Virus record (IMG/VR): IMGVR_UViG_3300048438_000153
Coordinates: 62,001-126,000 of that record
Strand: one strand, 5' to 3'
DNA length: 64,000 bases
Shown: piece after piece, positions 17,717-46,185 of the stretch
Layout of the letters: every line of letters begins with the position of its first letter
How positions within the stretch are numbered: position 1 is the stretch's first letter
Notes under the pieces: generated by a model
The model's database searches: none
Seen by the model: the letters and a program-made list of their open reading frames with translations, nothing else
Told to the model about the DNA's origin: nothing
Program-made: the position numbers and the translations under genes

Positions 17717-20010
17717 TAGGCGTAAGAGGCATTCTTTCCGAACACGTTATCATCTAGAACCTCTTCGATCTCACCGTAGTTCTCCTCATACCAATCGAGG
17801 TGACCTGGCTCATCGACCACATCGTCTTTCGCGCCCTTGAAGTACGCGATAATGATAGGTGTGATGATCTCAAGAAGAGGGATAGAAGCAGTCGCCCAAA
17901 GCGCCTCAATGCCTGTCAGCTTAACTAAGACATAAGGCAAGAGGTAGTGCTCAAGAACCTCCACAAACGCCACCGCGATTGCCATGAGAACAACCTTGAA
18001 TACGCGCATAGGCCACTTGATATACCACTGTTTATCTGCATCTGCATCCCAACCGTATTTCTTAATGATCTCAAAGGCGTGTTTGATGATCTCGATGGGG
18101 TTGATCGTATGCCATGCTTTCTTGAGGGCTCTCTCAATAACTTTCTTACTGTGCTCCTGAGCAGCCTCCTCAACCAACTTCTTCTTAACTGATGGAGGTA
18201 CAGGGAGTTGGTTAGTGTCTCCCCACACATAACCCTCAATAAACTCAGGGCTCTTATCGCTAGGAGGATCGAGCTCATCTACATAGCCTCCGCGAGACAT
18301 GGCGCGCTCTTGGTTACGGAGCTTTGCACCCTGTTCAAACTCTTCAAAGTCTGCGTCAACCTCTGCCTCAAGCATCTTCTCCGCGACTTCAGGGGCAATC
18401 GCCTCAATCACGTCATCCATGAGGTCATCTACAGGCATCGTGAAAAGGTCGAGATGTCTGCGGAACTTGTCGATAGGGTTCACGACATACTTAAGAAGCA
18501 TCGCCTTAAGTGAGTCTTTCGCGCCCGCCTGATAGTACATAGCAGCGGTTCTGATCTGACCCTCGTAAGAGTTCTGACTCGCTCTTCTCTGCATAACCTG
18601 ACGGACAACCTGTCTCTTCAAATGTCTTTGATCCATTTCTAGCTCTCTTTCTGAATGGGGGATCGTTTTCTTATATGGCTTCATTAACGACTTATCGAGA
18701 ACCCTACTTGCTGAAGAGGTCTTTGAGCTTTTCTTACTTAAGCTAAGGGCATCTACTAGCTCTTGGTCTATTTCTTTCTCTCCGCTTAAGTAAGACCTCA
18801 TCTCATTACCTATCCCCACAGGGTCTTTCTCTAACTCTTCTAAAATCATGTCTTGAACGTCATAGAAGTGTTTCATCCGCGCCAACATTACGAAAGTAGG
18901 TAACTTATCTTCTGAACCGAGCTTCAGGGAGTTAAAGAAACTCTGAAACTTCTTCATCGGAGTATACGCCTCTGAGTGACCCTCATAACCTAACTGTTTT
19001 AGACCCTTATCTATCGAGGGTCTTGCGTTTTCTTGAAAGTCAGAATAAAGCCCACATATCTTTTCTCTCGCGTCTTTTGGAGAAAGAGATTTGTCTTCTA
19101 AGACAGACTGTAGCTTTTTACTGTACTCAGCCTCCACCCCTTCGGGAGTTTGATAGCCTGAGTATATATCTGAAGCTAGGCTGTCGAAGTTAGAGGCACT
19201 TTCTCTCCTTTTGCTTGAGAGCTGATGTAGTGCTTTCTTGTAGAAAACCATCCCCGCCCCAAAAGCAACTGCGGTAGACCCCACTGTAGCAACCACACCT
19301 GTAGCACCTAAAGCAGTTAAGATATTGGTGGTCGCTAACCCCGCAACCGCATTAACAGAAGCAACCCCCCCTTGAGCTCCAGCGCCCCAACCTAACAGGG
19401 GGAGAACCGTAGTCATAGTCCAATTAAGAGAGCAATTTCTAACCATCTGCCTGACTTCAGGATTCTCATCTTTTTTCTTTGACTTCAAGACCTTAAGAGA
19501 CAGAATATCTCCGAGCATCTTCGGAGTTCTTCTTAGAAACTCGTCGCCGATAGATGCGTCCCAAAACTGCTTCAACGCACCCCTCTGAAAACCATCAGTC
19601 TTAAAGCTACGACTAACCTCACTCGCTAAAGCTTTTAAGGACTCTTCAGAAGTCTCTTGGAGAGTCAGGTTGAGCTTGTTATCAGAAAAGACGTCTTCAG
19701 GTAGCCCGAGATTAGGCTTAGATAAGTTCTCAACAACCTGCTTGGAGATGTCTTTCTGAACCGCTTCGTTGAAGCCCTCAAATAACTTGAGAGCGAAATC
19801 ATATCTAGCTTTGTTTAGAGGATCAGCTCTTTCTTTCTCTGAAAGGTAAGACCATCCCTTCACTGTGGTGTACTGAACAATGTTTCCTGTAGGCTTGAAA
19901 CAGTCCTCCCAATCTTTAAACTTTTTGTCGATAAGGTCAAAGACTGTCTCGCTCTCTGATTTTTTAAGTGCTTTCAGGTATCTTGAAGCGACTCTTCTTG
20001 ATGCGCTCAT
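17713..20010 (-). CDS. hypothetical 765-aa protein with two hydrophobic (TM-like) regions and an RVASRYL leader
   Basis: A Gly/Ala-rich hydrophobic stretch at about aa 200-255 and a C-terminal hydrophobic cluster. Several RxA motifs. Confidence 0.6.
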   Translation of the reverse strand: MSASRRVASRYLKALKKSESETVFDLIDKKFKDWEDCFKPTGNIVQYTTVKGWSYLSEKERADPLNKARYDFALKLFEGFNEAVQKDISKQVVENLSKPNLGLPEDVFSDNKLNLTLQETSEESLKALASEVSRSFKTDGFQRGALKQFWDASIGDEFLRRTPKMLGDILSLKVLKSKKKDENPEVRQMVRNCSLNWTMTTVLPLLGWGAGAQGGVASVNAVAGLATTNILTALGATGVVATVGSTAVAFGAGMVFYKKALHQLSSKRRESASNFDSLASDIYSGYQTPEGVEAEYSKKLQSVLEDKSLSPKDAREKICGLYSDFQENARPSIDKGLKQLGYEGHSEAYTPMKKFQSFFNSLKLGSEDKLPTFVMLARMKHFYDVQDMILEELEKDPVGIGNEMRSYLSGEKEIDQELVDALSLSKKSSKTSSASRVLDKSLMKPYKKTIPHSERELEMDQRHLKRQVVRQVMQRRASQNSYEGQIRTAAMYYQAGAKDSLKAMLLKYVVNPIDKFRRHLDLFTMPVDDLMDDVIEAIAPEVAEKMLEAEVDADFEEFEQGAKLRNQERAMSRGGYVDELDPPSDKSPEFIEGYVWGDTNQLPVPPSVKKKLVEEAAQEHSKKVIERALKKAWHTINPIEIIKHAFEIIKKYGWDADADKQWYIKWPMRVFKVVLMAIAVAFVEVLEHYLLPYVLVKLTGIEALWATASIPLLEIITPIIIAYFKGAKDDVVDEPGHLDWYEENYGEIEEVLDDNVFGKNASYAY

Positions 20011-20080: not shown

Positions 20081-20401
20081 ATGAACGAATGGGTCGTATA
20101 TGTCATTCAGAGTCAGCAACCTCGAAAGACAGCAAGTGGAAAGCCTACTGAGGGATTCTTCTACGTTGGGTGTACTACAGATGTTAGCCGTAGACTGAGA
20201 CAACACAACGGAGAAATAAGAGGTGGGGGTAAATATACATCAAAGCATAGACCTTGGAAGCTCATGTGTACCTATGGCACATACGCTAACAGATCTGAAG
20301 CTATGAAAGCAGAGTTAGCTCTTAAGAAGAAGCGAGGTAAGGCTAGGTTATACTGGACAGAGGAACAGTCTAAATGGTGCAGAGGCAAGAACCTCATTTA
20401 A
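20081..20401 (+). CDS. GIY-YIG nuclease, SLX1-like
   Basis: VVYVI...FYVGCTTDVSRRLRQHNGEIRGGGKYTSKHRPW...AMKAE. Confidence 0.88.
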   Translation: MNEWVVYVIQSQQPRKTASGKPTEGFFYVGCTTDVSRRLRQHNGEIRGGGKYTSKHRPWKLMCTYGTYANRSEAMKAELALKKKRGKARLYWTEEQSKWCRGKNLI

Positions 20402-21233
20402 GCTCTCTCACTTTGCCTTTCTTAAAAGAGGGCTCTATATCCCGTGTTTCGTATCGACCCTCTTCATTCCAACTTAGCTCTGTATAAAAGTATCTACCAT
20501 CAGCCTCAAAAGTAAGCTCTAAACCATCGGGATCTCTGTACAGGTCGAGATCTACCTTCTCAAATTTAGTCTGTATAGGTAAGCCATGTAGAGAAAGATA
20601 GTCTTTTAAAGCGGTTTCCAACTCTTCTGAGGTGACGTAAATATCATCTTCTCTATCTAACTCTCTCTGCATAAGAATGAGCATAGAGAAGAAACCAATA
20701 CCTCCCCCCGCTCTCTTCTCAAGAGACCCTGAATTCTTAGAGAGTAGCGCCTTGAGCTTCTCGTAGATCTCGTTGTTATTCTTACGATAGATCTCTCCTG
20801 AATCTGTGTGGAGAGAAAAGCGAGTGTCGCCATGTTGGAAACTATATATATTCCCAATGCCTCCCATACGTCTCCCACCACCTAAACTTGGGGATCTTCC
20901 CGTAGACCTTGCTCTCTGCATTAAGAACAGCGAAGGGTTCGCGCTTTTGTAATATCCGTCGTAGACCCTCTCTAAGTCTTGTATACACTTCCCTACGAAA
21001 TGGAAATGAACTCCATGAAATCTTACGTCCATCGTTATCTTCTTCTTGTCAGATAAGTCGATAGAAACATCAGAAACACCTCTTGTCGCTTTGACGTGGC
21101 TCTCTAGAAGTTTTTGCTCGCTCTCAAGAGTTACCTCTTCTCGACCCTTAAAAAGACCGAAGATCGCCTGCTTTTCGAGGCTTGCTACTCTCATCTCAAG
21201 GTAGTTGACTATTTCTGAAGCTGTTCTTCTCAT
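20394..21233 (-). CDS. hypothetical protein with MRRTASEI leader
   Basis: Leader MRRTASEIVNYLEMRVASLEKQA. The first domain is similar to that of 36865-37959. Confidence 0.7.
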   Translation of the reverse strand: MRRTASEIVNYLEMRVASLEKQAIFGLFKGREEVTLESEQKLLESHVKATRGVSDVSIDLSDKKKITMDVRFHGVHFHFVGKCIQDLERVYDGYYKSANPSLFLMQRARSTGRSPSLGGGRRMGGIGNIYSFQHGDTRFSLHTDSGEIYRKNNNEIYEKLKALLSKNSGSLEKRAGGGIGFFSMLILMQRELDREDDIYVTSEELETALKDYLSLHGLPIQTKFEKVDLDLYRDPDGLELTFEADGRYFYTELSWNEEGRYETRDIEPSFKKGKVRELK

Positions 21234-21556: not shown

Positions 21557-21955
21557 CTAGCGATCCTGATCTTTCTCTGAAGAGTCTAACCCACCAAGAG
21601 GGTAACTCATCCAAGAATACCTCTTTCTCGTGTCTAGGTAGTTGATGAACTTGTCACATTCCCAAGCCTCTTGCTCAAACCTGATGGCAAGGTAAGAGTC
21701 GCGGGTGAAACCCTTCTTTCTGACGATCGCGCTCCACAGATAGTCGAACAAGTAAATCAGTAGGAAGCCAACTACGAAAGTCTCAAGATACTGCTGAAAG
21801 TGAATCGTCTCATGCCTCTTGGTTTCCTCACTGAGCGTGCCCCTAGAAAACACGAAACAGAAGAGAGTGATCGCGCTGATTTCAATAGGGGCAAACTTTG
21901 ATAGCCATACGGGAATCTTAGAATTCTCGAAGAAAAACGGTTTTAAGCACTTCAT
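21557..21955 (-). CDS. HExxH zincin-like protein
   Basis: RHETIHFQQ...IRFEQEA. Confidence 0.65.
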   Translation of the reverse strand: MKCLKPFFFENSKIPVWLSKFAPIEISAITLFCFVFSRGTLSEETKRHETIHFQQYLETFVVGFLLIYLFDYLWSAIVRKKGFTRDSYLAIRFEQEAWECDKFINYLDTRKRYSWMSYPLGGLDSSEKDQDR

Positions 21956-28261: not shown

Positions 28262-28698
28262 TGATCTACAGGCGAGACGGACTCATCTTCACGAAGTTCA
28301 CAGACCCTCATTGGGCGAATCCTAAAGTAGCTCGGATTATGCCCACCCATGAAGGGGGTTCTTGGGGATCTTTCTTAGAGCTGAAAGACACCGAGTGGGC
28401 TCGATTCATTGATGAGGTGTCTCCCGAGTCAATAGAGAGAGCACTACAGGGCGACTCTACGCCCCTAATGAAAGAGGGTCTGCGCGACCCTAGAGGATGC
28501 CTGAAGAGATCCCCTCTTGAGAGAGAGTGCGCCGACGCGAAAGGGTGTACCTCATTTAAGAAATCAGTGTGTTCGTCTGCCTCGAAAAAGACACCTGAGT
28601 GCTTCGCTATTTCTAGGGAGTTACCCCCCTCAGTTCGAGTCCTTCTTTCTGCGTGGAAAGAAGGCTATTATGTAGTCAGAGAAAGGATCAAGACATGA
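28261..28698 (+). CDS. hypothetical Cys-containing protein
   Basis: Operon ORF with coupled stop/start and 5 Cys. Confidence 0.6.
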   Translation: MIYRRDGLIFTKFTDPHWANPKVARIMPTHEGGSWGSFLELKDTEWARFIDEVSPESIERALQGDSTPLMKEGLRDPRGCLKRSPLERECADAKGCTSFKKSVCSSASKKTPECFAISRELPPSVRVLLSAWKEGYYVVRERIKT

Positions 28699-29336
28699 GA
28701 GCTTTAAGCCCGTCTAATCGTAGGGTCTACCCTAACCAACCACAAAACAGCTCAGGCAAGTTGAGCAATAACTCTGAGTACTACGGAGACTTGACGGTCG
28801 CAGATAACAACATCTACCTCTACCAAGACATCACTCCGAAAGCGATGATGGAGCTTGGTATTGCGATCAAGAGCCTGAACAATCAGATTATCTCTCTCAT
28901 CAGTGAGCTAGAGATGTCGAGCGCGCCCACTATCCACCTCCACATCAACTCAGGTGGAGGGTGCGCTTTCAGTGGTCTCGCAGGAGCGAGCCATATCCTT
29001 AACTCTCAAATTCCTGTATCCACCTACGTCGAGGGAAGAGCGGCTTCAGCCGCTACTATTCTTTCTAGCGTGGGCGCGCACAGGTACATCACCGAACACA
29101 GCTTCATGCTAATCCATCAAGTCTCGACAGGTGTGTGGGGGACTTACGAAAACTTGAATGACGAGAAAGAAAGCATGGACTCTCTCATGGAGATGCTTGA
29201 ATCTATTTACCTCAAGCACACCAAGATGAAGAAGAAACAGCTCAAGCAACTCTTAAAGAGGGATCTTTGGATGAACCCTGAGAAATGCTTGGAGCTCGGG
29301 CTTGTTGACGAGATCATCAAGTACGAGCGCACTTGA
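28695..29336 (+). CDS. clpP: ClpP-family serine protease
   Basis: LHINSGGG, AASAAT (catalytic Ser), MLIHQ (His), RDLWM...ELGLVDEI. Start at the ATGA overlap, 28695. Confidence 0.9.
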   Translation: MRALSPSNRRVYPNQPQNSSGKLSNNSEYYGDLTVADNNIYLYQDITPKAMMELGIAIKSLNNQIISLISELEMSSAPTIHLHINSGGGCAFSGLAGASHILNSQIPVSTYVEGRAASAATILSSVGAHRYITEHSFMLIHQVSTGVWGTYENLNDEKESMDSLMEMLESIYLKHTKMKKKQLKQLLKRDLWMNPEKCLELGLVDEIIKYERT

Positions 29337-29385: not shown

Positions 29386-29736
29386 ATGAAAAGAACAGCA
29401 TCCGAAATTCTCAGTGACCTCGACAGGCGACTCGCACGTTTAGAAAGGACAGCATCAAGAGGTATAAGTGACGGCACTACAGAAGAGCTTCTTGACCGCA
29501 TCAACGACGAATACACCGAGTGGGTTGGGTGGCAATACCCGACGACTCTTAACCAAAGAAAAGACGGCGTTACCCTCGTTTCAGTCGAGGACTACTACGC
29601 AGTAATATGGGTCGGCTTCGGTGAGGGCGAAGACGAGATCATTGACATCACAAAGAATATGAGCAGAGCGAAGAGAATCTATCAGTCATTGAAGTTTGAC
29701 CCTATTCGCTACCCCCACTATCGCTTTAACACCTGA
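29386..29736 (+). CDS. hypothetical protein with MKRTASEI leader
   Basis: RBS ggagaaagaacATG; leader MKRTASEILSDLDRRLARLERTAS. Confidence 0.7.
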   Translation: MKRTASEILSDLDRRLARLERTASRGISDGTTEELLDRINDEYTEWVGWQYPTTLNQRKDGVTLVSVEDYYAVIWVGFGEGEDEIIDITKNMSRAKRIYQSLKFDPIRYPHYRFNT

Positions 29737-29740
29737 ATCA

Positions 29741-30757
29741 TTAGCTCTGAGCATCAATCGCGTGACTAAGAATCGTCCCGTGATATAAGATATCTTTCAG
29801 GGTTTCCACGTCACTGACCTGTTTCGAGGTCACTCTGATGTGTGCCTCTTGATATGACCTCCCTGACACACTAGGGAAATCATATCGAAAGAACAGGATG
29901 TTCCCATCTTCCCCGATGAGAGTGAACCGTTCTTCAGACGCCTTCATAAACAGTGGCGAGTATTTTCTGATGAAAGTATTGATCTCCCGATCAAGAGCCC
30001 TCTCGTCTTTCACGGAAACGACCTTCTCAGAATACTGTCTTTTAGAAGGTGGCTTGAGAGGGTTCTTGTCTAAGAAAGACATCTCTAAGGTGTAAAAATC
30101 AGAGCTAGAGATCAAGTACATATTCGCGACTCTAATCGCGCTCGCTCTCTTCGTAGAGCCTATATGCTCTATCACAGACCTGTTGTTGTCGATAAGAACA
30201 ACATCCCCACTCTCTACAGCTTCATAGAGAGCTCCATCGACACGAGGATGGATAGACAAAATATCCTCTCCTAACATCGGAACACCGTCTAAAGAAAACA
30301 GAGTTCTCATAAGAACACTCGCGCTATCTACAATGGCTTCGGCGATATCTTCCACATAAGGCTTCAGACTGTATTGAAGATCAACGGTCGTAAAGCTGTA
30401 ACCTCTTGGATTGAGCGCGTCTACTTTGTTATGTGGCTGTCCCATAACTTTCTTAAAGATCGTCTTGAACTCCCCTACCTCCATCACAGTAAGAACAGGT
30501 TTGATACCCCCCTTTTTCATCTTTACCGCGCCCATTGTCTCGTCAAGAGAAAGGATCATATGCCACACTCCTCTTTCGCATTTAATGACCCAAGTGTCGT
30601 CTACAACAACCTGACCATTTTTGCGGTAGGGGATCTTTTTCTTAGCACTCCATGTACTTTTAGGGACGTGAGTCACAGACCAATCAAGAGAGGGGGTCTT
30701 TCTATTCAAAACGCCCACTACAGGATCAGCCCATTTCTCGTCTGCATACTCCATCAC
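29741..30757 (-). CDS. two-domain hypothetical protein with an internal KRAS-RVANMYL junction
   Basis: The C-terminal domain is paralogous to 30754-31188. Confidence 0.65.
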   Translation of the reverse strand: MMEYADEKWADPVVGVLNRKTPSLDWSVTHVPKSTWSAKKKIPYRKNGQVVVDDTWVIKCERGVWHMILSLDETMGAVKMKKGGIKPVLTVMEVGEFKTIFKKVMGQPHNKVDALNPRGYSFTTVDLQYSLKPYVEDIAEAIVDSASVLMRTLFSLDGVPMLGEDILSIHPRVDGALYEAVESGDVVLIDNNRSVIEHIGSTKRASAIRVANMYLISSSDFYTLEMSFLDKNPLKPPSKRQYSEKVVSVKDERALDREINTFIRKYSPLFMKASEERFTLIGEDGNILFFRYDFPSVSGRSYQEAHIRVTSKQVSDVETLKDILYHGTILSHAIDAQS

Positions 30758-31188
30758 CGAACTTCTCTCAAGGCATGACTAAAAACAGTGCCATATTGCA
30801 AAATCTGAAGAAGATCCTCGTCGCTAAAGTCCTCTGAATCTATACCTATCAAAACGTACCTACCCTCACCGTTAAACTCACTGAGAGTGTACTTAAAGTT
30901 GGCTTGGTAAGAATCTCTAGTACGAAAAACTTCAAGGTAGGAGATGCGCTTTTCGTCAACCTCATTGAGATCCCACTCCACATCTTTCACATATTCTCTT
31001 AATGCCTTCTCGAATTCATCTTCGTTTCTTATATCAGTAATGGATGATCCGAGTGACCTTGGTTTATTTGCCCAAGGCTTATTTCGATAGTCTGTCCTAT
31101 CTTCATAGGTGAGTTGCATCTTAAAAGGGGCTCGTCCAGCAACCTTCATCCTTACGATGCGTTCTATCATTTCTTCCCTAGCCATCAC
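30754..31188 (-). CDS. hypothetical protein, paralogue of the C-terminal domain of 29741-30757
   Basis: LLQILQYGTVFSHAL versus LKDILYHGTILSHAI. Confidence 0.65.
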   Translation of the reverse strand: MMAREEMIERIVRMKVAGRAPFKMQLTYEDRTDYRNKPWANKPRSLGSSITDIRNEDEFEKALREYVKDVEWDLNEVDEKRISYLEVFRTRDSYQANFKYTLSEFNGEGRYVLIGIDSEDFSDEDLLQILQYGTVFSHALREVR

Positions 31189-31834: not shown

Positions 31835-33346
31835 TTAGTTAATACTACCAAGAGAAGAGTCCATCATATCCATCAGTTCGAGCAAGTTTTCACCTGATGT
31901 TCTTTCTCCGAGAGAGTCATCTAGTTGACTCATAAGAGAAAGAAGATTCTCACCCGCTGTGCGCCCTAGTGGGTAGCTCGGAGTCCCTATTGTGTTAGCG
32001 ACCTCAATGAACTTATCCACGTCGAAGCTGATCGTGTCGAAGCCTTGCAAGATCGCTTTCTCGATGTTTCTTTCTACATACCCCTGTGAGATGAAGTTTA
32101 AGACAATCATCGGACTCACATAGTAGTCAATCGTGTTTTGGCGTTCCATATGACTCAGACCTTGAGAAGCCCTCTCAAGAGCGTCATTAAAGAACTCTGA
32201 GACCTCATCAGCTACGAGTTTCTTAAGATCCGCTGTGCCTCTCTGCACGAGCGCCTTAATCGCTGTGTGGAGATCCTCTTGCTCCTCCTCAAAGTGATCA
32301 TAAAACTTGCGAGTGGCTTTCAGCATACGGAAGTCTCTTGGCTCAAGACCACAACTACCGACCTTCGATTTGACATATCTTCTTAAATAGTTGTAGTCGT
32401 ATTGAAAGCCACTTAAGCCTCTAAAGATGGGGAGCTGTGACTCAGGATCTCCACTACCTAAACCTACCTCTTCTGAGGCTTTCTCTATGTAGGGTGTAAG
32501 AGCCTCTATGATTTCTGTGTTAGAGAGCTCCGCTATGTTATCGACACCACTCTTACCGACGAACTTGATTTGAACAAAGTCCTCTCGAAACTCAGTGATG
32601 TGGGAGGGGCGAAGAGAAGAAGCGCCAAACGTAGAGATCTCTTCAACTACATTACCCCCACTGTCTTTTCTGACTGTCTTTCCGATTTTCTGAGATCCCG
32701 GCCTAATACCCGTCTCCATCATAATCGCAGTCAAGATCGCGCTAAGTCTGAGGTCTTCATGAGGGCTCTTCATATCAGTTAAGACTTCATCAACAAGATC
32801 GTTATAGTTGGATATCATATTAGCGAGGAGATCATGCTTATGGAGAAGATCTCTACCTTGGTTACCTACCCTATCACGCACCTGAGAAATATTACCCGCA
32901 TCGTCGAGTTTAAAAACGATGTTTCTCGGGAGATACTTTCGGATTGCCTGTGGGATTCTTTCTCTTACAGACGCCTGCTCGACGAAGAGGAGCTTATACT
33001 CGAACCCTTGATCTGCGTATCTCTTAACCCTTCCCTCCTCAATAGGAGTGACAGGCTCACCCTCAAAGAGAAGAGTCACTAGGAGGTTGAGCGCGCCGTT
33101 TCTGACGCGGTTAGATCCCTCAGCTTCTTCGAGAGTACCCATGTAAGTGTCTAGGTACTTCTCGACTTCAGAGAAAGCAGAAATGTACTTCTTGAATCTA
33201 GGCTTCTTATCGAAAGAAGCCACGTTTACTTTCTTATTGATTTTAGCGTGGAGCTTAATGAACTCCCTAACAGCCTTACGAGCGTGCTTGATCTGATTCT
33301 TTGCGTCTCGGACGTTGAGCGCGTCAGCTTGTATTTGAAATCCCAT
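31835..33346 (-). CDS. DNA topoisomerase IB (poxvirus/bacterial type)
   Basis: Catalytic pentad context: TGIRPG (R), FVGKSG (K), PRDFRMLKAT (R), LSH (H), TIDYYV (Y). Also STFGASSL. Confidence 0.88.
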   Translation of the reverse strand: MGFQIQADALNVRDAKNQIKHARKAVREFIKLHAKINKKVNVASFDKKPRFKKYISAFSEVEKYLDTYMGTLEEAEGSNRVRNGALNLLVTLLFEGEPVTPIEEGRVKRYADQGFEYKLLFVEQASVRERIPQAIRKYLPRNIVFKLDDAGNISQVRDRVGNQGRDLLHKHDLLANMISNYNDLVDEVLTDMKSPHEDLRLSAILTAIMMETGIRPGSQKIGKTVRKDSGGNVVEEISTFGASSLRPSHITEFREDFVQIKFVGKSGVDNIAELSNTEIIEALTPYIEKASEEVGLGSGDPESQLPIFRGLSGFQYDYNYLRRYVKSKVGSCGLEPRDFRMLKATRKFYDHFEEEQEDLHTAIKALVQRGTADLKKLVADEVSEFFNDALERASQGLSHMERQNTIDYYVSPMIVLNFISQGYVERNIEKAILQGFDTISFDVDKFIEVANTIGTPSYPLGRTAGENLLSLMSQLDDSLGERTSGENLLELMDMMDSSLGSIN

Positions 33347-34189: not shown

Positions 34190-36868
34190 ATGTTTGACGA
34201 CTTTCTCGCAGACATAAGACGACCTGTCATAGAGTCCTACGAATGGATGAAAGAATGTGACCTAATCTTAGGCACGAAAGAGAACATAACTCAAGCCATT
34301 GACGAGTGCATGGCGGTTGAAGTCTACGGTTGCGACATCGAGACTACAGGACTTGACAACCGCGTCTTTGAAGGGCGCACGATGGACTCTATCGTGGGTA
34401 TCGGGATCGCGCCATCTCACGACAAGGCTTATTACTTTCCTATCGGACACAAGTCAGGCTCAGAGTATAACATTCCTTGGTCAATCATCGGACGAGAGTT
34501 TGGGCGTCTGTTCGACCCTTCCACGAAAGCCCGACCTGTCTTCCACAACATCTCTTTCGACGCGCCTTTCTTAGAGTACAACGGCTTCTTCTCGCTCGGG
34601 AAAGATCGGTGGGATGACCACAAGAAATGGGAAGACTCTCTCATCATCAAGTACCTCCTCAACCCACGTCAAAAAGGAGGGCGTGGGCTTAAGGCTCTGT
34701 CAGACAAGCTCTGTGACATGAAGATGATTGAGCTCAATGAGCTATTCCCCCCTGAAGAGGAACAGCGAGACTACTCGACCATTGACCCTTCATGGCAACC
34801 TTGTGTACTCTACGCGGCGGCTGATCCTCTCTGTACTCTCAGAATATGGGATATCATGAGAAAGGAATACGAAGATGCGCCTGAGCACTCTGACTCGATG
34901 TATAACCTCGAAAAGATGTGCTGTATCGCCACCTCATGGATGCACCGATGCCGAGTGTATATTGACCCTGAGAAAGCGATGGAGTCAGCGATTGAAGGTC
35001 AGCGCCTATGGTGGGAGAGTCTACTAGAGGTATATAAGGGCGCGTCTAAGATTCTAGAGAGAGACATCACACCCTCTTTCGTCAAGATCATGCGCGATGG
35101 ATCAAGAGGTCTGATCGAGCCCTTCGACCCCCGAGCCATCTCTGAGGGAGGGAGCGCCAACTACAAAGTGATCGTACAGGAAGCTCGAAGATACGCGCAA
35201 AACACCGCACCTGATCCAACTCAAAAGATCAGTAAGAGTGTGGCTCTGCTCGGTAAGTCTGCTGGTACTGAGAAAGTGGAGTTTCCCTATACGTATGACG
35301 TTCTCTCTCCTCAACAGCTAGGTTTGCTCTTGAGAGAGTTGGGAGTAGATGGTCTGCTCGCCTCTGAGAAGTCAGGCCAAGTAGTCACTAAGGGAGAAGT
35401 TCTCGATGAGGTCATCGAGAAAAACTCTGAGAAACTCCCTTTCATGAAGAAAGTGAAGAACCTCCGTGTTCTCGTCAAGGCGCTCAGCCAATACCTCATC
35501 CCTTTCATAGAGGACATTGGATCTGACGGTACGCTGAAGCCGAAGTTCGATCAGTTCAGTGCTGACACAGGGCGTTTTTCGTGTAAGACTAACAGTAAGC
35601 CCCATATCGTGAGAGACGGCGGTTGTCGCGTACCTTTTCAGGGCATCCCCGCCTATGGAAAAGACAAAGACAAGAAGCCCGCGATCATTTCTTACATGAG
35701 AGATTGTATAGTCGCGCGCGAAGAAGGGTGGTGGCTGACCGCGATTGACTACGCAGGTGTAGAGCTAAGACTCGTAACTAACCTCTCGAAAGAGCCCCTG
35801 TGGATTAAAGCTTTCTTCGAGTGTTCAGACTGTGGGCAACAGTACCCTAGAGAGATGGGGGAAGATGAGATTCCCACACCGACTCCAACCTATTGTGTGT
35901 GTGGGTCGGATCGCATAGGTGATCTGCACACTGTAACTGCGGTTGCTTTCTACGGCGAGGGCGCTAAGGGAAAACCTGATTGGAAAGACAAGCGAGGGAA
36001 CGGAAAGGGATGTAACTTCGCCCTTTCTTACGGAGGCACAGGGAAAGCTGTTCAGCGCACTATCAAGTGCTCTGCTAAGGAAGGGGACGAAAAGTATAAG
36101 ACTTTCACGAGCACTTACAAGACACTCGCCTCTTGGTGGGGGAAACAGAACAAGTTCGCCCATAAACATGGCTATGTTAAGACGGCTTTCGGACGAGTTC
36201 AGCCCCTCCCTGATATCCACGACGAGGATTACAGAAAGTCCTCGAAAGAGGAGAGAAAGGCGGTGAATGGACCTGTTCAGGGAACGAGCGCGGATATCAC
36301 GAAGCTCGCGATGAGTCTCATCTACAGAGAGGTTAAGAAACGAGGGTGGTTCGATAAGCTCAAGATGATCCTTACAGTCCACGACGAGATTGTCTTTGAG
36401 ATCCATGAAGACGTGATCGGAGAGGCTATCCCTGTACTGACTCAGATTATGGCGAGAAACAAAGCAATCGCCAATCAGGGATGGGAAGTCCCTCTCCTTG
36501 TAGACGTAGAGATCGGAAAGACGTGGGGAGTGCCATACGACCTCAAAGACTTAAGGCGAGGGTACAAGGAAAAGCTCGTACCTGACGGCGTTGATGAAAA
36601 GGGGGAGAAGAAGTACAGAGAGGAGCGCGTTCCTGTGCCTGAATCACTCGCTAAGATTTTCTATGTGGGGAGTGAGGCTGATGAGCCTTCTTCAAGCTCG
36701 CCTGAGAAAGAAGAAGGCTCAGGTTCTTCATCCGAAAGCCCCTCTAAGACTTATGTGCTTAAAGAGCTTTCTCAGGACTCCGCGTTCGATTTGGGTATGT
36801 GGCTCTCCCATAATACGGACGGTGTTGTAACGTATGAGGGGAGAGACATCACGGCGCTGTTTTCTTAG
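34190..36868 (+). CDS. polA: DNA polymerase family A with 3'-5' exonuclease
   Basis: ExoI CDIETTGL, ExoII FHNISFD, ExoIII YAAAD; DTGRFSC; motif A IDYAGVELR, motif B RGNGKGCNFALSYG, NGPVQGTSADI, motif C VHDEIV. Confidence 0.95.
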   Translation: MFDDFLADIRRPVIESYEWMKECDLILGTKENITQAIDECMAVEVYGCDIETTGLDNRVFEGRTMDSIVGIGIAPSHDKAYYFPIGHKSGSEYNIPWSIIGREFGRLFDPSTKARPVFHNISFDAPFLEYNGFFSLGKDRWDDHKKWEDSLIIKYLLNPRQKGGRGLKALSDKLCDMKMIELNELFPPEEEQRDYSTIDPSWQPCVLYAAADPLCTLRIWDIMRKEYEDAPEHSDSMYNLEKMCCIATSWMHRCRVYIDPEKAMESAIEGQRLWWESLLEVYKGASKILERDITPSFVKIMRDGSRGLIEPFDPRAISEGGSANYKVIVQEARRYAQNTAPDPTQKISKSVALLGKSAGTEKVEFPYTYDVLSPQQLGLLLRELGVDGLLASEKSGQVVTKGEVLDEVIEKNSEKLPFMKKVKNLRVLVKALSQYLIPFIEDIGSDGTLKPKFDQFSADTGRFSCKTNSKPHIVRDGGCRVPFQGIPAYGKDKDKKPAIISYMRDCIVAREEGWWLTAIDYAGVELRLVTNLSKEPLWIKAFFECSDCGQQYPREMGEDEIPTPTPTYCVCGSDRIGDLHTVTAVAFYGEGAKGKPDWKDKRGNGKGCNFALSYGGTGKAVQRTIKCSAKEGDEKYKTFTSTYKTLASWWGKQNKFAHKHGYVKTAFGRVQPLPDIHDEDYRKSSKEERKAVNGPVQGTSADITKLAMSLIYREVKKRGWFDKLKMILTVHDEIVFEIHEDVIGEAIPVLTQIMARNKAIANQGWEVPLLVDVEIGKTWGVPYDLKDLRRGYKEKLVPDGVDEKGEKKYREERVPVPESLAKIFYVGSEADEPSSSSPEKEEGSGSSSESPSKTYVLKELSQDSAFDLGMWLSHNTDGVVTYEGRDITALFS

Positions 36869-37959
36869 ATGCTCCAACCTATAGGGACGTATTTATCTTC
36901 AAGCCTCACGCCGTTGTAGGAGTACTGTTTCTTCTGAGGACCTATATACCTATCTCTTGTAAACTCTCTGTCAGAGTCTTCTATATACTCCTTAAGTTTA
37001 CGTCTCTCATGATCAGTCATCTTTCTTTTCTTCGGCTTATTGTCAACGTAGATGAGCTTCTTTTTGAGGACTTGCCTTAAGAAAGAGTAAGCGAGGTCAC
37101 TGTGGAGTGTGTTCCTTGCCTTCCTACCGTATGTCTCCTCTATAATGTCCGTCACCTCGTCAGCGTCAACAGCGAGGTGGGCGCTATCCGCCCAATCGTA
37201 AAGGTCTGAAGCGCCTTTTAAGAATGTCTTAATTTCAGACGAGTCAGAAAGACTAGCGAGCTTGAAATACACTTCGACCCCTCTGTACTGAAAGCAAATC
37301 GTATGGCTCTTTTCTTTTAAGAAAGAAAAGCCATGCCTCTTGAGGAGTTCATTTGATCTAAGGGTGTCTTGATACTCGGGCTTACTTTGATACATAGACT
37401 CAGAGTTCCATCTCTGATAGTATTCAGGAAACTCAGGGTACGCGCTCATCTTGTCGAGCCGAGCGATTCTCCCTCTAGAGCTATTCCTTTCTCCCCCTTC
37501 TAAATCGAGTAACTCCGTGAGCCCAATAACAGTAGAAAGAACAGAATAAAGCCCCTTTGTGGTGGAGATCACGACTGATTTCTCAAGTCCTCTTCTGTCA
37601 ATCTCATACCTAGTGATGGGGATCTGCCCCGACCTCAAGCCTGTGGGTCTAATTTTCGAGTCATAAACTCCGAATCTCTCTGTTTCGTCGTGAGTAACCT
37701 TTCCGTTAAAAACGAAAATCTCCCCCCGAAAGATAAGATTGATTCTGAGACCCCCTTTTTTTGAGATAGAGACATCGACTCGATCAACGTCGTCAAGGTT
37801 CGCTTTTATCGCGCCCTCAATCGACTCTTCTTCTTCTCTAGTGTAGCTTTTAAAGAGGTTAAGAAACCCTGACTCTGTTTCTGAAGCAAAGTGATCACCC
37901 TCAAGTCGGGCGACCCTGATCTCTAGGTCGGAAAGGATTTCTGAAGCTGTTCTTCTCAT
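36865..37959 (-). CDS. hypothetical protein with MRRTASEI leader
   Basis: Leader MRRTASEILSDLEIRVARLE, plus an internal RIARLDK. Confidence 0.7.
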   Translation of the reverse strand: MRRTASEILSDLEIRVARLEGDHFASETESGFLNLFKSYTREEEESIEGAIKANLDDVDRVDVSISKKGGLRINLIFRGEIFVFNGKVTHDETERFGVYDSKIRPTGLRSGQIPITRYEIDRRGLEKSVVISTTKGLYSVLSTVIGLTELLDLEGGERNSSRGRIARLDKMSAYPEFPEYYQRWNSESMYQSKPEYQDTLRSNELLKRHGFSFLKEKSHTICFQYRGVEVYFKLASLSDSSEIKTFLKGASDLYDWADSAHLAVDADEVTDIIEETYGRKARNTLHSDLAYSFLRQVLKKKLIYVDNKPKKRKMTDHERRKLKEYIEDSDREFTRDRYIGPQKKQYSYNGVRLEDKYVPIGWSI

Positions 37960-38839: not shown

Positions 38840-39161
38840 GATCCCCCGCAAGCATATTAGAAAGTTCCTCAACAAAGACCCTGAAACCATTGATATTATT
38901 AAGAAATGGCTCGACAAGAATGGGCTGATCATTCTCTTTACTCAAAGAAAAGCAAAGGGGTGGGAAAAAGTTTGGGCCACAGATGGGGGCAATATCTATA
39001 TGAATGATGAGGATCACAACCCTACTTCAGAAGAACTCGACATAAGGATCAGGAAAGTATCTGTGAAAGAGCAAGAGCCATTGCGCGAGGATCTGCTAGG
39101 GAAAGACGTGTCTTTGAGAGACAAACTAGAATACTTAAAAGAGATGGAAAGACCCCTGTAA
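38784..39161 (+). CDS. hypothetical protein
   Basis: Its stop overlaps the next start (TAATG). Exact start uncertain. Confidence 0.5.
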   Translation: MKKEEFGDLTWRRVSPLGKIPRKHIRKFLNKDPETIDIIKKWLDKNGLIILFTQRKAKGWEKVWATDGGNIYMNDEDHNPTSEELDIRIRKVSVKEQEPLREDLLGKDVSLRDKLEYLKEMERPL

Positions 39162-40354
39162 TGTTTTTTGAATATGATAAAGAAAAACCAAAGCTCCTAG
39201 ATGAGACAACAATAAATGGCCCGTCAGGAAACCTTTATATCCCCAAAGGGCTTTGGCAAGACATGATCAAATCTTATGAGAAAGAAGATGTCTTGAACCG
39301 CCTCCGAGACTTAATCAACAAGGGAGTGATTTCTTTCCCTTATCAACACTACAGTAAAGAGGAGGTGCTTGACGAGTTTCAGCGACTCAGGAACTCAGTA
39401 GCTTCTTTCTCTGAAAGCGAGTGGGAGTGCAACCGATTGGTGACTGAAGCCCCTCTCTCATTTAGGAGAGGTAGCTACTACACTCCCAAGTCAGCTCGGG
39501 TTGGGAGTAAGGTGTCTGATTTGTTCACACAGAGAATAAGAATGGAGGTTGGACATCAGAGGTTTCTTTCTCCTATAAGAGCGTGGGAGAGTGAAAGAAA
39601 GTCCTTTCTCAACTATCTCTTCAACCCTGATATGTTTGAAGGAGACATCAACGAAAGATGTCTCAGAGTTTCGCTGAGTATGAGGTCATACATTGCGAGT
39701 CAGTTCAAACCTGAGTCAGCTAAGGTCATTTATGATACCTTTCAAGCCAAGAGAGTCCTAGACTTCAGCGCGGGATGGGGAGATAGACTCGTCGGGTTCC
39801 TCGCAAGTAATGCTGAGAGTTATATAGGGATTGACCCTAACTCTAAACTCCACGAACCCTATCAGAAGATTGTCGATTTCTGTGACGTAGGGAAAGAAAC
39901 AAGGTTCATCTGCGCTCCCGCAGAGGAAGCAGATTTAACGGGTGTTGAGGTGGACTTTATATTCACCTCTCCTCCCTATTTCACTCTCGAAAGGTACAGT
40001 CAGGAAGACACTCAGAGTTGGAAGCGATACCCTAAAATCAACGCTTGGCTAGATGGATTTCTATTTCCTACTTTATCTAAGTGTTGGAATTGCCTTGAAG
40101 AAGGGGGGAGAGTACTCGTCAATATCGCCGACGCTTATACGAATGGAGAGCGAGAGGAAATATGTCAGCCGATGTTAAGACATATGGAATCTCTTGGGGC
40201 TACTTACGAGGGAGTCATAGGTTACGAAATGGGAGCGAGACCAGGTAAAAACATGGATAATATCGGCAAGACTTTCTGTGAGCCGATATGGGTTTGGAGC
40301 AAAGGGGAAGCTCCCGAACCTAAGTGGAAATCAGATACGTTTTTGGGAGTCTAA
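39161..40354 (+). CDS. DNA amino-methyltransferase (N4-C/N6-A type), paralogue 1
   Basis: Motif I VLDFSAGWGDR, IGIDPN, motif IV FTSPPYF. Confidence 0.85.
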   Translation: MFFEYDKEKPKLLDETTINGPSGNLYIPKGLWQDMIKSYEKEDVLNRLRDLINKGVISFPYQHYSKEEVLDEFQRLRNSVASFSESEWECNRLVTEAPLSFRRGSYYTPKSARVGSKVSDLFTQRIRMEVGHQRFLSPIRAWESERKSFLNYLFNPDMFEGDINERCLRVSLSMRSYIASQFKPESAKVIYDTFQAKRVLDFSAGWGDRLVGFLASNAESYIGIDPNSKLHEPYQKIVDFCDVGKETRFICAPAEEADLTGVEVDFIFTSPPYFTLERYSQEDTQSWKRYPKINAWLDGFLFPTLSKCWNCLEEGGRVLVNIADAYTNGEREEICQPMLRHMESLGATYEGVIGYEMGARPGKNMDNIGKTFCEPIWVWSKGEAPEPKWKSDTFLGV

Positions 40355-40355
40355 T

Positions 40356-41066
40356 ATGTGGGGTTATTATGGGTCAAAAGCAAAGATTGTTAGTCAATAC
40401 CCGAAGCCGACCAAAGATAAGATTATAGAGCCATTTGCAGGAACTGCTCAATATGCTCTTAAATACTTTGATAGAGACATAGAACTCTATGATAAATATG
40501 AGCTGATCGTAAATCTTTGGAAGTGGTTACAGAAATGTAGCCCAAAAGACATCACATCACTACCTCACTTAAAGGCAGGCGAGAGCGTAGATGATTACGA
40601 ATGGGATTGTGATGAAGCAAAACACTTAATAGGCTTCATCATTTCAGGCGGTGCTACTCAGCCAAAAAAATCAGTGACTAAGTGGAAAGCGGTGATCAGG
40701 CCGAACACTCAAAACTACAAGAAAACTCTCATTTCTTCTAACCTATACAAGATCAGGCATTGGAACATCGAGTGTAAGTCTTATGAAGAAATAGATAACC
40801 AAGAAGCTACTTGGTTCATTGACCCTCCTTATGAAGAGGGGGGGGTATATTACAGACACAGCTCAAAAAACATAGATTTCAGCCACCTTTCAGAATGGTG
40901 TCAGGAACGTGAGGGAGAAGTGATTGTCTGTGAGAAACAAGGTGCGTCTTGGCTTCCCTTTGAACCGCTTACAGAAGTGAAAGGCTTGAAGGCACAGAGC
41001 TTCCAAGAAGCAGTCTGGTTGAAGAACATGAGTTTACCTAAGCAATTAGACTTGTTTGGACTTTAA
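40356..41066 (+). CDS. Dam/D12-like N6-adenine methyltransferase (short form)
   Basis: YYGSK, IEPFAGTA, FIDPPY. True start MWGYY at 40356. Ends KQLDLFGL. Confidence 0.85.
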   Translation: MWGYYGSKAKIVSQYPKPTKDKIIEPFAGTAQYALKYFDRDIELYDKYELIVNLWKWLQKCSPKDITSLPHLKAGESVDDYEWDCDEAKHLIGFIISGGATQPKKSVTKWKAVIRPNTQNYKKTLISSNLYKIRHWNIECKSYEEIDNQEATWFIDPPYEEGGVYYRHSSKNIDFSHLSEWCQEREGEVIVCEKQGASWLPFEPLTEVKGLKAQSFQEAVWLKNMSLPKQLDLFGL

Positions 41067-41069
41067 GAA

Positions 41070-41246
41070 ATGAAGAACCAAATATTTAACGAGGTCTGCT
41101 TAGAAACCATGTCTCGAATGAGCGATAGCTCAATAGACAAAAACATGAATAACATCGGCAAGACCTTCTGTGAGCCGATATGGGTTTGGAGTAAGGGCGA
41201 AGCCCCTGAGCCCAAGTGGAACCAAGACACTTATTTCGGAGTATGA
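41070..41246 (+). pseudogene. 58-aa chimeric relic: beta-class MTase-like N-terminus fused to an SPPY-paralogue C-terminus
   Basis: MKNQIFNEVCLETMSRMSDSSID|KNMNNIGKTFCEPIWVWSKGEAPEPKWNQDTYFGV*. The second half nearly duplicates the end of 39161-40354. Confidence 0.75.
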
Positions 41247-41249
41247 AGC

Positions 41250-42401
41250 ATGAGTCTTACTAGAAAGAGCTTTCTCAACTCTAAAGGTGAGATATACCTC
41301 ACACAGAAAGAGATTAGAACCCTTGCGAAAGAACATGACATAGAAGAGATTATAGAGGTACTCGGTAAGATCGTAGACGAGTTGCCTTTCCCACTCACTG
41401 AGTACACAGATCAAGAGGTCATAACCGATTTTAATAGGTTAAAAAACACACACCTTGAAGTTATACGGGGCGGTTGGGTGAGCCACAGGATAGATGAGGC
41501 GATCTCTCCTTTATACAGAGGGGAGTCAATAAGATTCCCTAAGACAAGAAACATAGGGGGCAAAGTCTCTAATCAATACACAGAGGCGTTAAGGTTATCT
41601 ACGCCTCATGCGAGATACAAAAGCCACAAAGATCTTTGGTATGCTAAGAGAAAGTATTGGTTAAAGTATTTCTTCAACATCAAGATGCACACAGGAAATC
41701 TCGAACAGGGTAAGCTGAGGCAAGGTTTGTCAGGTCAATATTACTGCTCTCAGTTTAAACCTCTCATCGCTAAGTCAATGTACGATACTTTCCAAGCTAA
41801 GAGAGTCTTAGACTTCAGCGCGGGATGGGGAGACAGACTCGTGGGCTTCCTCGCGAGCGGAGCTGAGAGTTATGTCGGGATAGACCCTAACTCTAAGCTA
41901 CATGAACCCTATCAGAAGATCGCTGATTCTATTTCTGATAGGGTAGCTTCGACTTTCGTCAGCCCTGCGGAAGATTTTGATTATAACTCTGTTGAGTACG
42001 ACTTTGTGTTTACTAGCCCTCCCTATTTCGACCTAGAGAGATACAGCAACGAAGGCACTCAAAGTTGGAAAAGGTACTCAGAATTTGAAGAGTGGGTTCA
42101 AAACTTCCTGTTTAAAACGCTAACCGCCTGTTGGAGAAACCTCTCAGACAACGGTCGGATGATAATTAACATATCTGACATATATTCAAAGGGAGCAAAG
42201 AGAGAGATCTGTAGCCCCATGTTAAGACATATGGAGTCTCTAGGCGCTACCTATGAAGGTGTTATAGGGTATGAGATGGCCCATAAGACTAGCAAATCGG
42301 TTAAGCGACACGATCTGCCTTTCTGCGAGCCTATGTTCGTGTGGTCAAAAGGAAACCCACCTGAGCCTCAGTGGAACTCCCAACTCTTTTTTGAGATCTA
42401 A
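41250..42401 (+). CDS. DNA amino-methyltransferase, paralogue 2
   Basis: VLDFSAGWGDR and FTSPPYF. Confidence 0.85.
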   Translation: MSLTRKSFLNSKGEIYLTQKEIRTLAKEHDIEEIIEVLGKIVDELPFPLTEYTDQEVITDFNRLKNTHLEVIRGGWVSHRIDEAISPLYRGESIRFPKTRNIGGKVSNQYTEALRLSTPHARYKSHKDLWYAKRKYWLKYFFNIKMHTGNLEQGKLRQGLSGQYYCSQFKPLIAKSMYDTFQAKRVLDFSAGWGDRLVGFLASGAESYVGIDPNSKLHEPYQKIADSISDRVASTFVSPAEDFDYNSVEYDFVFTSPPYFDLERYSNEGTQSWKRYSEFEEWVQNFLFKTLTACWRNLSDNGRMIINISDIYSKGAKREICSPMLRHMESLGATYEGVIGYEMAHKTSKSVKRHDLPFCEPMFVWSKGNPPEPQWNSQLFFEI

Positions 42402-42537
42402 GACTCCTGACCCTGAGCCTAAGTGGACACAAGACAACTTCTTCGGAGTTTAAGAAATGCAGAACCAAATCTTCAATGAGGAGTACTTCAAGATGTCGAA
42501 AGTAAGACTAGAAAACACTCAGGAGTATCTTTTCTAA
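42402..42537 (+). pseudogene. two relics: an orphan MTase tail (PDPEPKWTQDNFFGV*) and an internally deleted MTase mini-ORF at 42457-42537
   Basis: The mini-ORF MQNQIFNEEYFKMSKVRLENTQEYLF* joins an N-terminus like that at 41070 to a beta-MTase-type C-terminal EEY..S..RL helix. Confidence 0.65.
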
Positions 42538-44957: not shown

Positions 44958-44960
44958 GCT

Positions 44961-46184: not shown

Positions 46185-46185
46185 G

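What the first reader, a model, noticed from the sequence alone, without database searches (positions are those of the whole stretch)
29741..31188. Internal leader motif sits exactly at a domain-fusion boundary
In the 338-aa protein, KRASAIRVANMYL immediately precedes a domain paralogous to the neighbouring stand-alone 144-aa protein. That protein itself starts MIERIVRMKVAG, and the two share the ending L..IL.(H/Y)GT(I/V).SHA. This is in-window evidence that the motif demarcates modules, as expected for a polyprotein cleavage or targeting tag.
Basis: seen in the sequence. Interest (0 to 1): 0.6.

Follow-up and report, generated by a model that had tools for sequence, protein, structure and literature searches.

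The report
Portable peptide tag at a domain junction
In an uncultivated marine huge phage, a short peptide that sits at the ends of several unrelated proteins also lies inside one 337-residue protein, exactly where a swappable front domain joins a back domain duplicated in the neighbouring gene; the junction is real, but whether the protein is cut or sorted there is untested.

Summary
The window is part of a 275-kb marine huge-phage record. The 337-aa protein (29741-30754, -) has three parts: an N-domain (res 4-201), the motif K202-L214 (KRASAIRVANMYL), and a C-domain. The upstream 143-aa gene is a paralogue of motif plus C-domain (hhalign E 6.5e-13, 131 columns; a bridging relative gives BLASTP E 1e-13).

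The boundary at codon 201/202 is marked independently twice. A relative's DNA identity jumps there from about 0.55 to 0.93. Another relative carries a clean 594-nt deletion of residues 4-201. At the same syntenic locus, relatives carry N+motif+C, N+motif only, or motif+C.

The motif ([RK]VA.[RMA]Y[LF]) occurs 8 times in the genome, against 0.03 expected. Four copies are N-terminal, two C-terminal and two in linkers. The copies differ at synonymous sites, so selection acts on the protein.

The 143-aa protein's MIERIVRMKVAG is the positional homologue of the motif but does not score as a motif copy.

Nothing here shows cleavage or targeting. My best reading is a portable docking or targeting peptide at a module junction. 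No Pfam, PHROG or literature match was found.

The parts
29741..30754 (-). Gene for the 337-aa fusion protein (P0003): N-domain, motif and C-domain. The ATG is at 30754-30752 and the stop at 29743-29741.
   Evidence: ORF list and translation. Database clusters start at this ATG. Full-length relatives P0004, P0005 and P0012 exist. A contig from an independent run, X11, bridges 29943-30346 with no differences.
30152..30745 (-). N-terminal domain cassette (residues 4-201), which is variable and dispensable.
   Evidence: It is only about 0.5-0.6 nt-identical to L006, while the flanks are 0.9-1.0 identical. It is cleanly deleted in L027/L028. It occurs alone, with the motif as its C-terminal tail, in P0013, P0014, P0015 and P0019. 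It has no Pfam, PHROG or PDB sequence match.
30113..30151 (-). Motif K202-L214, KRASAIRVANMYL. The shared element extends to about E224 (window 30083). It is predicted as a helix at 203-214.
   Evidence: Motif HMM E 2.8e-5 within the genome. It is 48-58% identical over 19-23 aa to the N-termini of the unrelated 106-aa and 169-aa proteins. AF2 predicts helix 203-214, at low confidence. The breakpoint and the deletion endpoint both fall at its first codon.
29744..30097 (-). C-terminal globular alpha/beta domain (about residues 220-337), paralogous to the 143-aa protein.
   Evidence: hhalign E 6.5e-13. The predicted secondary-structure order is the same in both proteins. There is a weak fold lead to cyanophage Mic1 Gp72, 6l2w_B, at Z 6.6, rmsd 2.6 A, 86 aligned.
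30754..31185 (-). Gene for the 143-aa stand-alone paralogue (P0006) of the motif-helix plus C-domain module. Its stop (30756-30754) overlaps the ATG of the downstream gene.
   Evidence: Homology to the C-module.
31141..31179 (-). N-terminal helix of the 143-aa protein (residues 3-15, REEMIERIVRMKV). It is the positional homologue of the motif helix, but the consensus has decayed.
   Evidence: It aligns to the motif. AF2 predicts helix 3-15. It is not recognised by the motif HMMs. It is nearly invariant among the five family members.

Best explanation
The 337-aa protein is a natural two-module fusion. A fast-evolving, dispensable N-terminal domain (residues 4-201) is joined to a conserved alpha/beta domain of about 118 residues. 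The joint is a short basic helix, K202-L214 of the form KKAS..RVA.(R/M)YL, followed by a Ser-rich turn. The upstream gene is a tandem paralogue of helix plus C-domain in which the helix has drifted away from the consensus.

Shown: the helix is one copy of a phage-wide family of portable peptides. Eight copies of this type lie at N-termini, C-termini or inter-domain linkers of otherwise unrelated proteins. The copies are conserved at the protein level, not the DNA level.

Inferred: the peptide is an autonomous docking or targeting tag read by a common partner, for example to bring diverse proteins into one assembly such as the procapsid or another phage structure. Because the tag works on its own, and both flanking domains work with it alone, domain gain, loss and allele exchange in this gene are tolerated only when they resolve at its edge. 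That would explain why independent breakpoints coincide at codon 201/202. Cutting at the tag is neither needed for this reading nor shown.
For: Module homology. The predicted secondary-structure order is the same in both proteins (a-b-b-a-b-b-b-a), with helix 203-214 matching helix 3-15.

Boundary at codon 201/202:
- L006 nucleotide identity rises from about 0.55 to about 0.93 there, and synonymous changes fall from about 50% to about 10%.
- L027/L028 carry a 594-nt in-frame deletion of window 30745-30152.

All three architectures occur at the same locus (topo IB, 191-aa gene, the variable slot, then the convergently transcribed (ClpP)/145-aa/primase genes).

Motif family:
- 8 copies against 0.03 expected, at termini or linkers.
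- Codons differ between copies.
- Similarity to the 106-aa and 169-aa proteins is confined to 19-23 residues.
- A second, longer leader (MRRTASEIL.DLE.R[IV]ARLE) heads at least 11 further proteins. Its third codon positions vary (majority frequency 0.63, against 0.83 and 0.90 for the first two positions).

Precedent, from the literature rather than tested here: T4 uses 10-20-residue N-terminal capsid targeting sequences, and giant-phage paralogues share N-terminal propeptides (PMC5694885).
Against: No partner is known and there is no experimental or proteomic evidence. Motif-bearing proteins have no recognisable virion annotation. The 143-aa paralogue keeps a conserved helix without the consensus, so in the C-module the helix may be mainly structural. 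The structure models have low confidence (pLDDT 54 and 61). The link between the two leader types rests only on a shared R[VI]A core (hhalign P 0.027).
Confidence: 0.5

Rival explanations
1. Polyprotein-type processing. A phage protease cuts at or next to the motif, releasing the N-domain and the motif+C-domain as separate products. In proteins that carry the motif at an end, the protease removes it.
For: Each half exists as a stand-alone protein in relatives. An invariant Glu196 lies six residues before the motif, in the context [VI]-x-E-[LH]-[LIM]-G-[ST]-P-K-K-A. This recalls the Glu-specific (L/I)-x-E and A-x-E sites of T4 and giant-phage prohead proteases (PMC5694885). A ClpP-like S14 protease gene lies two genes away, and lies beside the gene in L027, L029 and L033.
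Against: No cleavage signature is common to all eight copies. Four of them begin at or within a few residues of Met1, so nothing conserved lies upstream of them. The ClpP-like gene is missing from the syntenic loci L003 and L031, which still carry motif proteins. No T4-type S77 protease was found, although the control for that search was blank. The conserved Glu may simply belong to the last strand of the N-domain.
Confidence: 0.15
2. The coincidence of breakpoints reflects DNA, not protein. The conserved motif-coding stretch acts as a patch of homology at which alleles and modules recombine, as in the 'linker' model of phage mosaicism, and the peptide has no tag function.
For: Two independent events end at the same codon. 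In the L006 comparison the first well-conserved DNA after the variable cassette begins at the motif.
Against: The eight motif copies use different codons at almost every position, so they offer little homology between different genes. Selection is visibly on the peptide. Breakpoints at domain borders are also expected from selection on folding alone.
Confidence: 0.15
3. The motif is a degron or adaptor-recognition tag that times the turnover of a set of phage proteins, through the phage ClpP-like protease acting with a host unfoldase.
For: The motif lies at termini. C-terminal copies have basic tails: RRVADRYLAR, KKVASRYLRERKDRRG and RVATKALRKRGLK. The genome holds a single ClpP-like gene. From general knowledge, not tested here, ClpX recognition signals are short N- or C-terminal peptides.
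Against: Internal copies would be inaccessible to an end-recognising unfoldase. I did not look for a phage unfoldase. The ClpP gene is not conserved at this locus.
Confidence: 0.08
4. The helix is only an ordinary structural element of the C-domain, inherited by duplication, and its likeness to other proteins' termini means nothing.
For: The whole-module alignment runs through the helix. The paralogue keeps a helix without the consensus.
Against: There are 8 copies against 0.03 expected. The motif is retained as the C-terminal tail of N-domain-only proteins that lack the C-domain. The fold match to Gp72 starts after the helix, at residue 220 in one model and residue 20 in the other.
Confidence: 0.07

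Closest known systems
Capsid targeting sequences (CTS) of T4 internal proteins, and the shared N-terminal propeptides of giant-phage head proteins (SPN3US gp53/gp54, phiKZ)
   Same: A short peptide of 10-20 residues is shared by several otherwise different proteins of one phage, and paralogues carry near-identical N-termini (PMC5694885). About twenty proteins per genome are tagged here, which is of the same order as the processed head proteins of giant phages.
   Different: Known CTSs are N-terminal only and end in a Glu cleavage site read by a T4-type prohead protease. Here copies are also C-terminal and internal, no common cleavage site is seen, no S77 protease was detected, and virion location is unknown.
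Encapsulin cargo-loading peptides and other short linear docking motifs (for example clamp-binding or SSB-tail-binding motifs)
   Same: The peptide is position-independent (N-terminal, C-terminal or between domains) and is attached to unrelated proteins. It is conserved as a peptide rather than as DNA.
   Different: There is no sequence similarity to any of these. No shell or hub partner has been identified. This comparison comes from general knowledge and was not tested here.
Viral polyprotein junctions
   Same: A conserved short sequence sits between two modules that can each exist as a separate protein.
   Different: There are only two modules and no dedicated protease has been shown. The same sequence also sits at the true termini of other proteins. 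The modules are also encoded separately by ordinary genes in relatives.
Cyanophage Mic1 Gp72 (PDB 6l2w), a protein of unknown function described as a novel fold
   Same: The C-domain model (220-337) aligns to the whole chain at Z 6.6, rmsd 2.6 A, 86 residues. The paralogue's model independently lists the same chain at Z 4.1.
   Different: Both Z values are below the level that separates real from common arrangements. The models have low confidence. There is no sequence-level link. The function of Gp72 is unknown, so the match would explain nothing.

Membership tests
T4-type capsid targeting sequence / prohead-protease propeptide | Located at the N-terminus of the precursor (10-20 residues) | tested here: not met
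   This copy lies at residues 202-214 of 337. Four other copies in the genome are N-terminal, two are C-terminal and one more is internal.
T4-type capsid targeting sequence / prohead-protease propeptide | Ends in a Glu cleavage site ((L/I)-x-E or A/S/G-x-E) shared by all substrates | tested here: inconclusive
   An invariant Glu196 lies upstream of this copy, and TLE224 lies downstream in some members but not in P0012-P0015. No Glu site is common to all eight copies.
T4-type capsid targeting sequence / prohead-protease propeptide | A cognate prohead protease is encoded by the phage | tested here: inconclusive
   No PF03420 (S77) match was found, but the control search found it nowhere, so the result carries no weight. 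One ClpP-like S14 gene sits among replication genes and is absent from two syntenic relatives. The record is estimated to be 88% complete.
T4-type capsid targeting sequence / prohead-protease propeptide | Tagged proteins are found inside the head, with the tag removed | not testable with these tools
   The phage is uncultivated and no virion proteome exists.
Viral polyprotein | Mature products are generated by proteolysis at the junction | not testable with these tools
   This needs mass spectrometry or western blots. Only DNA runs hold this sequence; none is on record as RNA.
Paralogous domain family (C-module of the 337-aa protein and the 143-aa protein) | Significant sequence similarity over the whole module | tested here: met
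   hhalign probability 97.9%, E 6.5e-13 over 131 columns. The bridging relative gives BLASTP E 1e-13.
Paralogous domain family (C-module of the 337-aa protein and the 143-aa protein) | Same fold | tested here: inconclusive
   The predicted order of helices and strands is identical. Both models have low confidence (pLDDT 54 and 61) and I did not superpose them.
Genome-wide motif family KKAS..RVA.(R/M)Y(L/F) | Match to the core [RK]VA.[RMA]Y[LF], with upstream K-K/R/T-A-S | tested here: met
   The 337-aa protein scores E 2.8e-5 with the motif HMM. Its relative P0004 carries the canonical RVASRYL. The 143-aa protein's N-terminus does not match.
Any curated protein family (Pfam, PHROGs, PDB sequences) | Profile match above threshold | tested here: not met
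   No family matches either protein. PDB profile searches give only E above 0.01. A profile search of 1.84 billion representatives found ten proteins at E up to 0.001: the query's own cluster, eight from the same marine phage clade, and one repeat-driven false positive.

The most novel reading that the evidence does not exclude
The RVA.RYL peptides, together with the MRRTASEIL..RVARLE leaders, form a previously undescribed protein-sorting code of a clade of marine huge phages. About twenty proteins would be addressed to one destination, such as the procapsid, an ejection-protein body or another phage compartment. The internal copy in the 337-aa protein would then be a junction at which a variable effector-like domain is delivered and possibly released from its carrier domain.
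Probability: 0.2. Interest if true: 0.7.

Novelty: new variant of a known kind. Interest (0 to 1): 0.5.

Why it matters
If the peptide is a sorting or docking tag, it offers a simple sequence handle for predicting which of the many unannotated proteins of these abundant marine huge phages travel together. Such proteins could be virion-internal or ejected proteins, for example. The natural series of variants at one locus (domain present, absent, swapped or fused) also shows how phage accessory proteins are assembled from modules at tag boundaries. If the peptide is only a linker, the result is still a clean, well-documented case of domain fusion, domain loss and tandem duplication in a protein family of unknown function.

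Tried and rejected
- **Heterodimer of the C-module and the 143-aa paralogue.** Complex prediction scored 0.00 and gave no verdict, so this is evidence neither way.
- **Fold assignment.** The 143-aa model matches nothing above Z 5; roadblock/longin-like and beta-lactamase rows sit at Z 4-4.9. For the 337-aa model the best match is Mic1 Gp72 at Z 6.6, and the N-domain rows at Z about 6 are heterogeneous: actin capping protein, Mediator, PsiB and anti-CRISPRs. None is reliable at these confidences.
- **ESM Atlas.** There was no usable feature hit.
- **P0018.** This 1154-aa hit from the representative search is a repeat protein whose many weak stretches add up. BLASTP gives E 0.05, so I rejected it as a false positive.
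- **L035.** The 133-aa gene right after the N-domain-only gene weakly resembles the C-module (hhalign E 1.6e-4). That long-read contig has many split genes, so I did not count it as a true gene fission.
- **Internal translation start before the motif.** The only in-frame candidate is GTG194. It has no proper Shine-Dalgarno spacing and is not conserved in L006, so I rejected it.
- **Intein-like excision of residues 4-201.** There is no C/S/T at +1 and no terminal His-Asn, so I rejected it.
- **DNA-level repeat.** The codons differ between copies, so I rejected it.
- **Cultured or annotated phages.** There is no DNA or protein match for this locus. IMG/VR holds only a near-identical contig.
- **Literature.** The string RVASRYL returned nothing.
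- **Metagenome contigs.** Laying four runs on the locus showed only identical fragments and no joints.
- **Major capsid protein.** Searches with PF05065 and PF07068 found nothing, so the head module was not located.

Full report
**Context.** The window is bases 62001-126000 of a single 275,102-bp virus record, estimated 88% complete. It is a tailed huge phage. Its genes include baseplate J/wedge proteins, a family A DNA polymerase, SNF2 and DnaB helicases, a DnaG-type zinc ribbon, a ClpP-like protease and a topoisomerase IB-like protein. The nearest deposited phage is an uncultured 485-kb phage whose polymerase is 44% identical. The same or closely related DNA occurs in seawater metagenomes from 17 studies.

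**The observation.** Both ORFs and all the quoted strings are present.
- The true starts are the ATGs one codon inside the GTGs, giving 337 aa (P0003) and 143 aa (P0006).
- The stop of the upstream gene overlaps the start of the downstream one.
- Pairwise BLASTP aligns only the last 45 residues (E 3e-4).
- Family profiles raise this to E 2.8e-6.
- A profile search of 1.84 billion representatives supplied the diverged full-length relative P0012. With it, the module alignment reaches probability 97.9% and E 6.5e-13 over 131 columns, with P0003 203-335 against P0006 4-141.
- The C-part of P0012 matches the 143-aa protein directly (E 1e-13, 28% identity over 145 aa). In that alignment AKKAMAIRVAKFAMKKSSSPF lies opposite AREEMIERIVRMKVA-GRAPF.
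- The AF2 models have low confidence (pLDDT 54 and 61). They give the same order of elements, a-b-b-a-b-b-b-a, with helix 203-214 matching helix 3-15.

So the duplicated unit is motif helix plus C-domain.

**The boundary.** Three kinds of natural variation mark codon 201/202, the first codon of the motif.
1. Against relative L006 the locus is 0.9-1.0 identical in DNA, except for two cassettes. One is the first two thirds of the 143-aa gene. The other is residues ~26-201 of the 337-aa gene, where identity is 0.5-0.6 and about half of the conserved residues carry synonymous changes. Identity returns to 0.9 or more at residue 202.
2. Contigs L027 and L028 align to window 30915-30746 and then 30151-28000. 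This is a clean 594-nt in-frame deletion of residues 4-201. It yields P0011, which reads MDY-L-KRASAVRVANMYL followed by the C-domain.
3. At the same syntenic position, other relatives encode the N-domain ending 17-22 residues after the start of the motif, with no C-domain at all. These are P0013 in L031/L032, P0014 in L033/L034, and the fragment P0019.

All the intact proteins keep the motif, whichever domain is lost. If breakpoints were uniform along 337 codons, two independent events falling within a codon or two of the same site would have a chance of the order of 1e-4. That figure is my rough inference, not a computed result. An independent metagenome contig bridges the junction without differences, so the fusion is not an assembly artefact.

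**The motif is a family.**
- The core [RK]VA.[RMA]Y[LF] occurs eight times in the genome's ORFs, against 0.03 expected.
- Four copies are at N-termini: the 765-aa protein (17713-20010), the 169-aa protein (15121-15630), the 106-aa protein (48351-48671) and a 173-aa protein outside the window.
- Two copies are at C-termini, in proteins of 253 and 1155 aa outside the window.
- Two are internal. One is in the 337-aa protein. The other is in a 553-aa protein, where it lies in a Lys/Ser/Gly-rich linker between a GNAT-like domain and a domain with an HExxH motif.
- Similarity to the 106-aa and 169-aa proteins is confined to 19-23 residues: the motif plus a Ser-rich turn. Identity there is 48-58%.
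- The copies use different codons at nearly every position, so the constraint is on the peptide.
- A second, longer leader, MRRTASEIL.DLE.R[IV]ARLE, starts at least eleven further proteins, three of them in the window. Its codons 8-20 vary synonymously. Its first 23 nt are nearly identical in eight of eleven copies.
- The two types share only the K/R-T-A-S start and an R[VI]A core. That link is not significant on its own (hhalign P 0.027).
- The N-terminus of the 143-aa protein does not score with either motif model. It is nevertheless nearly invariant within its own family.

**What it is likely to do.** Everything above concerns anatomy and evolution. Function is inferred.

The distribution is the signature of an autonomous short docking or targeting peptide: it lies at termini and linkers, it is attached to unrelated proteins, it is conserved at the protein level, and it is retained whichever neighbouring domain is lost. 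The closest documented analogues are the T4 capsid targeting sequences and the shared N-terminal propeptides of giant-phage head proteins (PMC5694885). This case fails the defining features of those systems wherever they could be tested. The copy is internal, no common Glu cleavage site exists, and no T4-type protease was detected, although that search had a blank control.

For the cleavage reading, two points stand in favour. An invariant Glu196 lies six residues upstream, in a [VI]-x-E context. A ClpP-like gene lies nearby in four of six loci. Against it, that gene is missing from two loci that keep the motif proteins, and four motif copies begin at or beside Met1.

I therefore rank the readings as follows:
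- portable docking or targeting tag at a module junction, about 0.5;
- cleavage junction, about 0.15;
- DNA-level recombination linker as the main role, about 0.15;
- degron, about 0.08;
- purely structural helix, about 0.07.

**The two domains.** Neither domain has a Pfam, PHROG or PDB sequence match. The whole family numbers about eight representatives in 1.84 billion, all from the same marine phage clade. The only structural lead for the C-domain is cyanophage Mic1 Gp72, itself of unknown function. It scores Z 6.6 for the 337-aa model and Z 4.1 for the paralogue. In both cases the match begins just after the motif helix. This is too weak to count as membership.

The N-domain cassette has the pattern usually seen in phage accessory or host-interaction genes: hypervariable, swappable and deletable. 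That is an inference from pattern only.

**Verdict.** The claim that the motif demarcates modules is confirmed by independent natural variants. The cleavage or targeting function remains a hypothesis. The peptide family and both domains are undescribed. The kind of thing they represent, a shared terminal peptide and module shuffling at its edge, has precedents.

Noticed in passing
window 20394-21233 (-), 29389-29736 (+), 36865-37959 (-); also G000:C1 24938-25586, 27205-27840, 132303-133106, 135917-136411, 140937-142358, 215110-216006: At least eleven otherwise unrelated proteins (87-364 aa) begin with the same 20-residue leader, MRRTASEIL.DLE.R[IV]ARLE. L8, L11, I15 and L18 fall in an a-d-a-d heptad pattern. 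The first 23 nt (ATGAGAAGAACAGCTTCAGAAAT) are nearly identical in 8 of 11 copies, while later codons vary synonymously. The leader also occurs in other IMG/VR marine phage contigs.
   Followed up: partly
window 31835-31960 (-), C-terminus of the 503-aa topoisomerase IB-like protein: The protein ends in two tandem acidic helical repeats, RTAGENLLSLMSQLDDSLG and RTSGENLLELMDMMDSSLG. These are conserved in relatives L003, L006, L029 and L031. They could be another tag, or a binding site for the basic motifs.
   Followed up: partly
window 28653-29336 (+): The ClpP-like S14 protease gene is the only one in the genome and sits among replication genes. It is a presence/absence polymorphism: present in the window, L027, L029 and L033, and absent from the otherwise syntenic L003 and L031.
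   Followed up: partly
G000:C1:169740-171398 (-), outside the window (locus L007): A 553-aa protein has a GNAT-like N-domain (best PHROG match is to a 3925-position giant-protein family), then an internal RVASRYL motif in a Lys/Ser/Gly-rich linker, then a C-terminal region with an HExxH motif. It is the second case of the motif lying between domains.
   Followed up: partly
window 39161-47364 (+): This is a run of several N6/N4 DNA methyltransferase-like genes with repeated segments. L003 and L006 DNA matches several places here at 73-84% identity.
   Followed up: no
window 21557-21955 (-): A 132-aa protein matches PHROG 15610, annotated 'protease' (E 2e-21). It lies directly upstream of a run of tag-bearing genes (20394-21233, 17713-20010, 15121-15630) that leads to the baseplate module. 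It has no Pfam match.
   Followed up: no
window 12821-13573 (-): A 250-aa protein between the baseplate genes and the tag-bearing genes has a weak PAS-domain match (E 9e-5, below the curated cut-off).
   Followed up: no
locus L031 2850-4340 (+) and 8257-9756 (-): A related phage carries two diverged topoisomerase IB-like genes flanking this locus, both with acidic C-terminal repeats.
   Followed up: no
locus L029 4311-4928 (-): A 205-aa protein in a relative starts MRSSANDRVKSLLKKVARLEKSAG. This leader is intermediate between the two types seen in the window's genome.
   Followed up: no
window 30901-31188 (-): The first two thirds of the 143-aa gene form a second locally divergent cassette against L006 (0.57-0.73 nt identity, within flanks of 0.9 or more). 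Its last 45 codons and the first codons of the next gene are conserved.
   Followed up: partly
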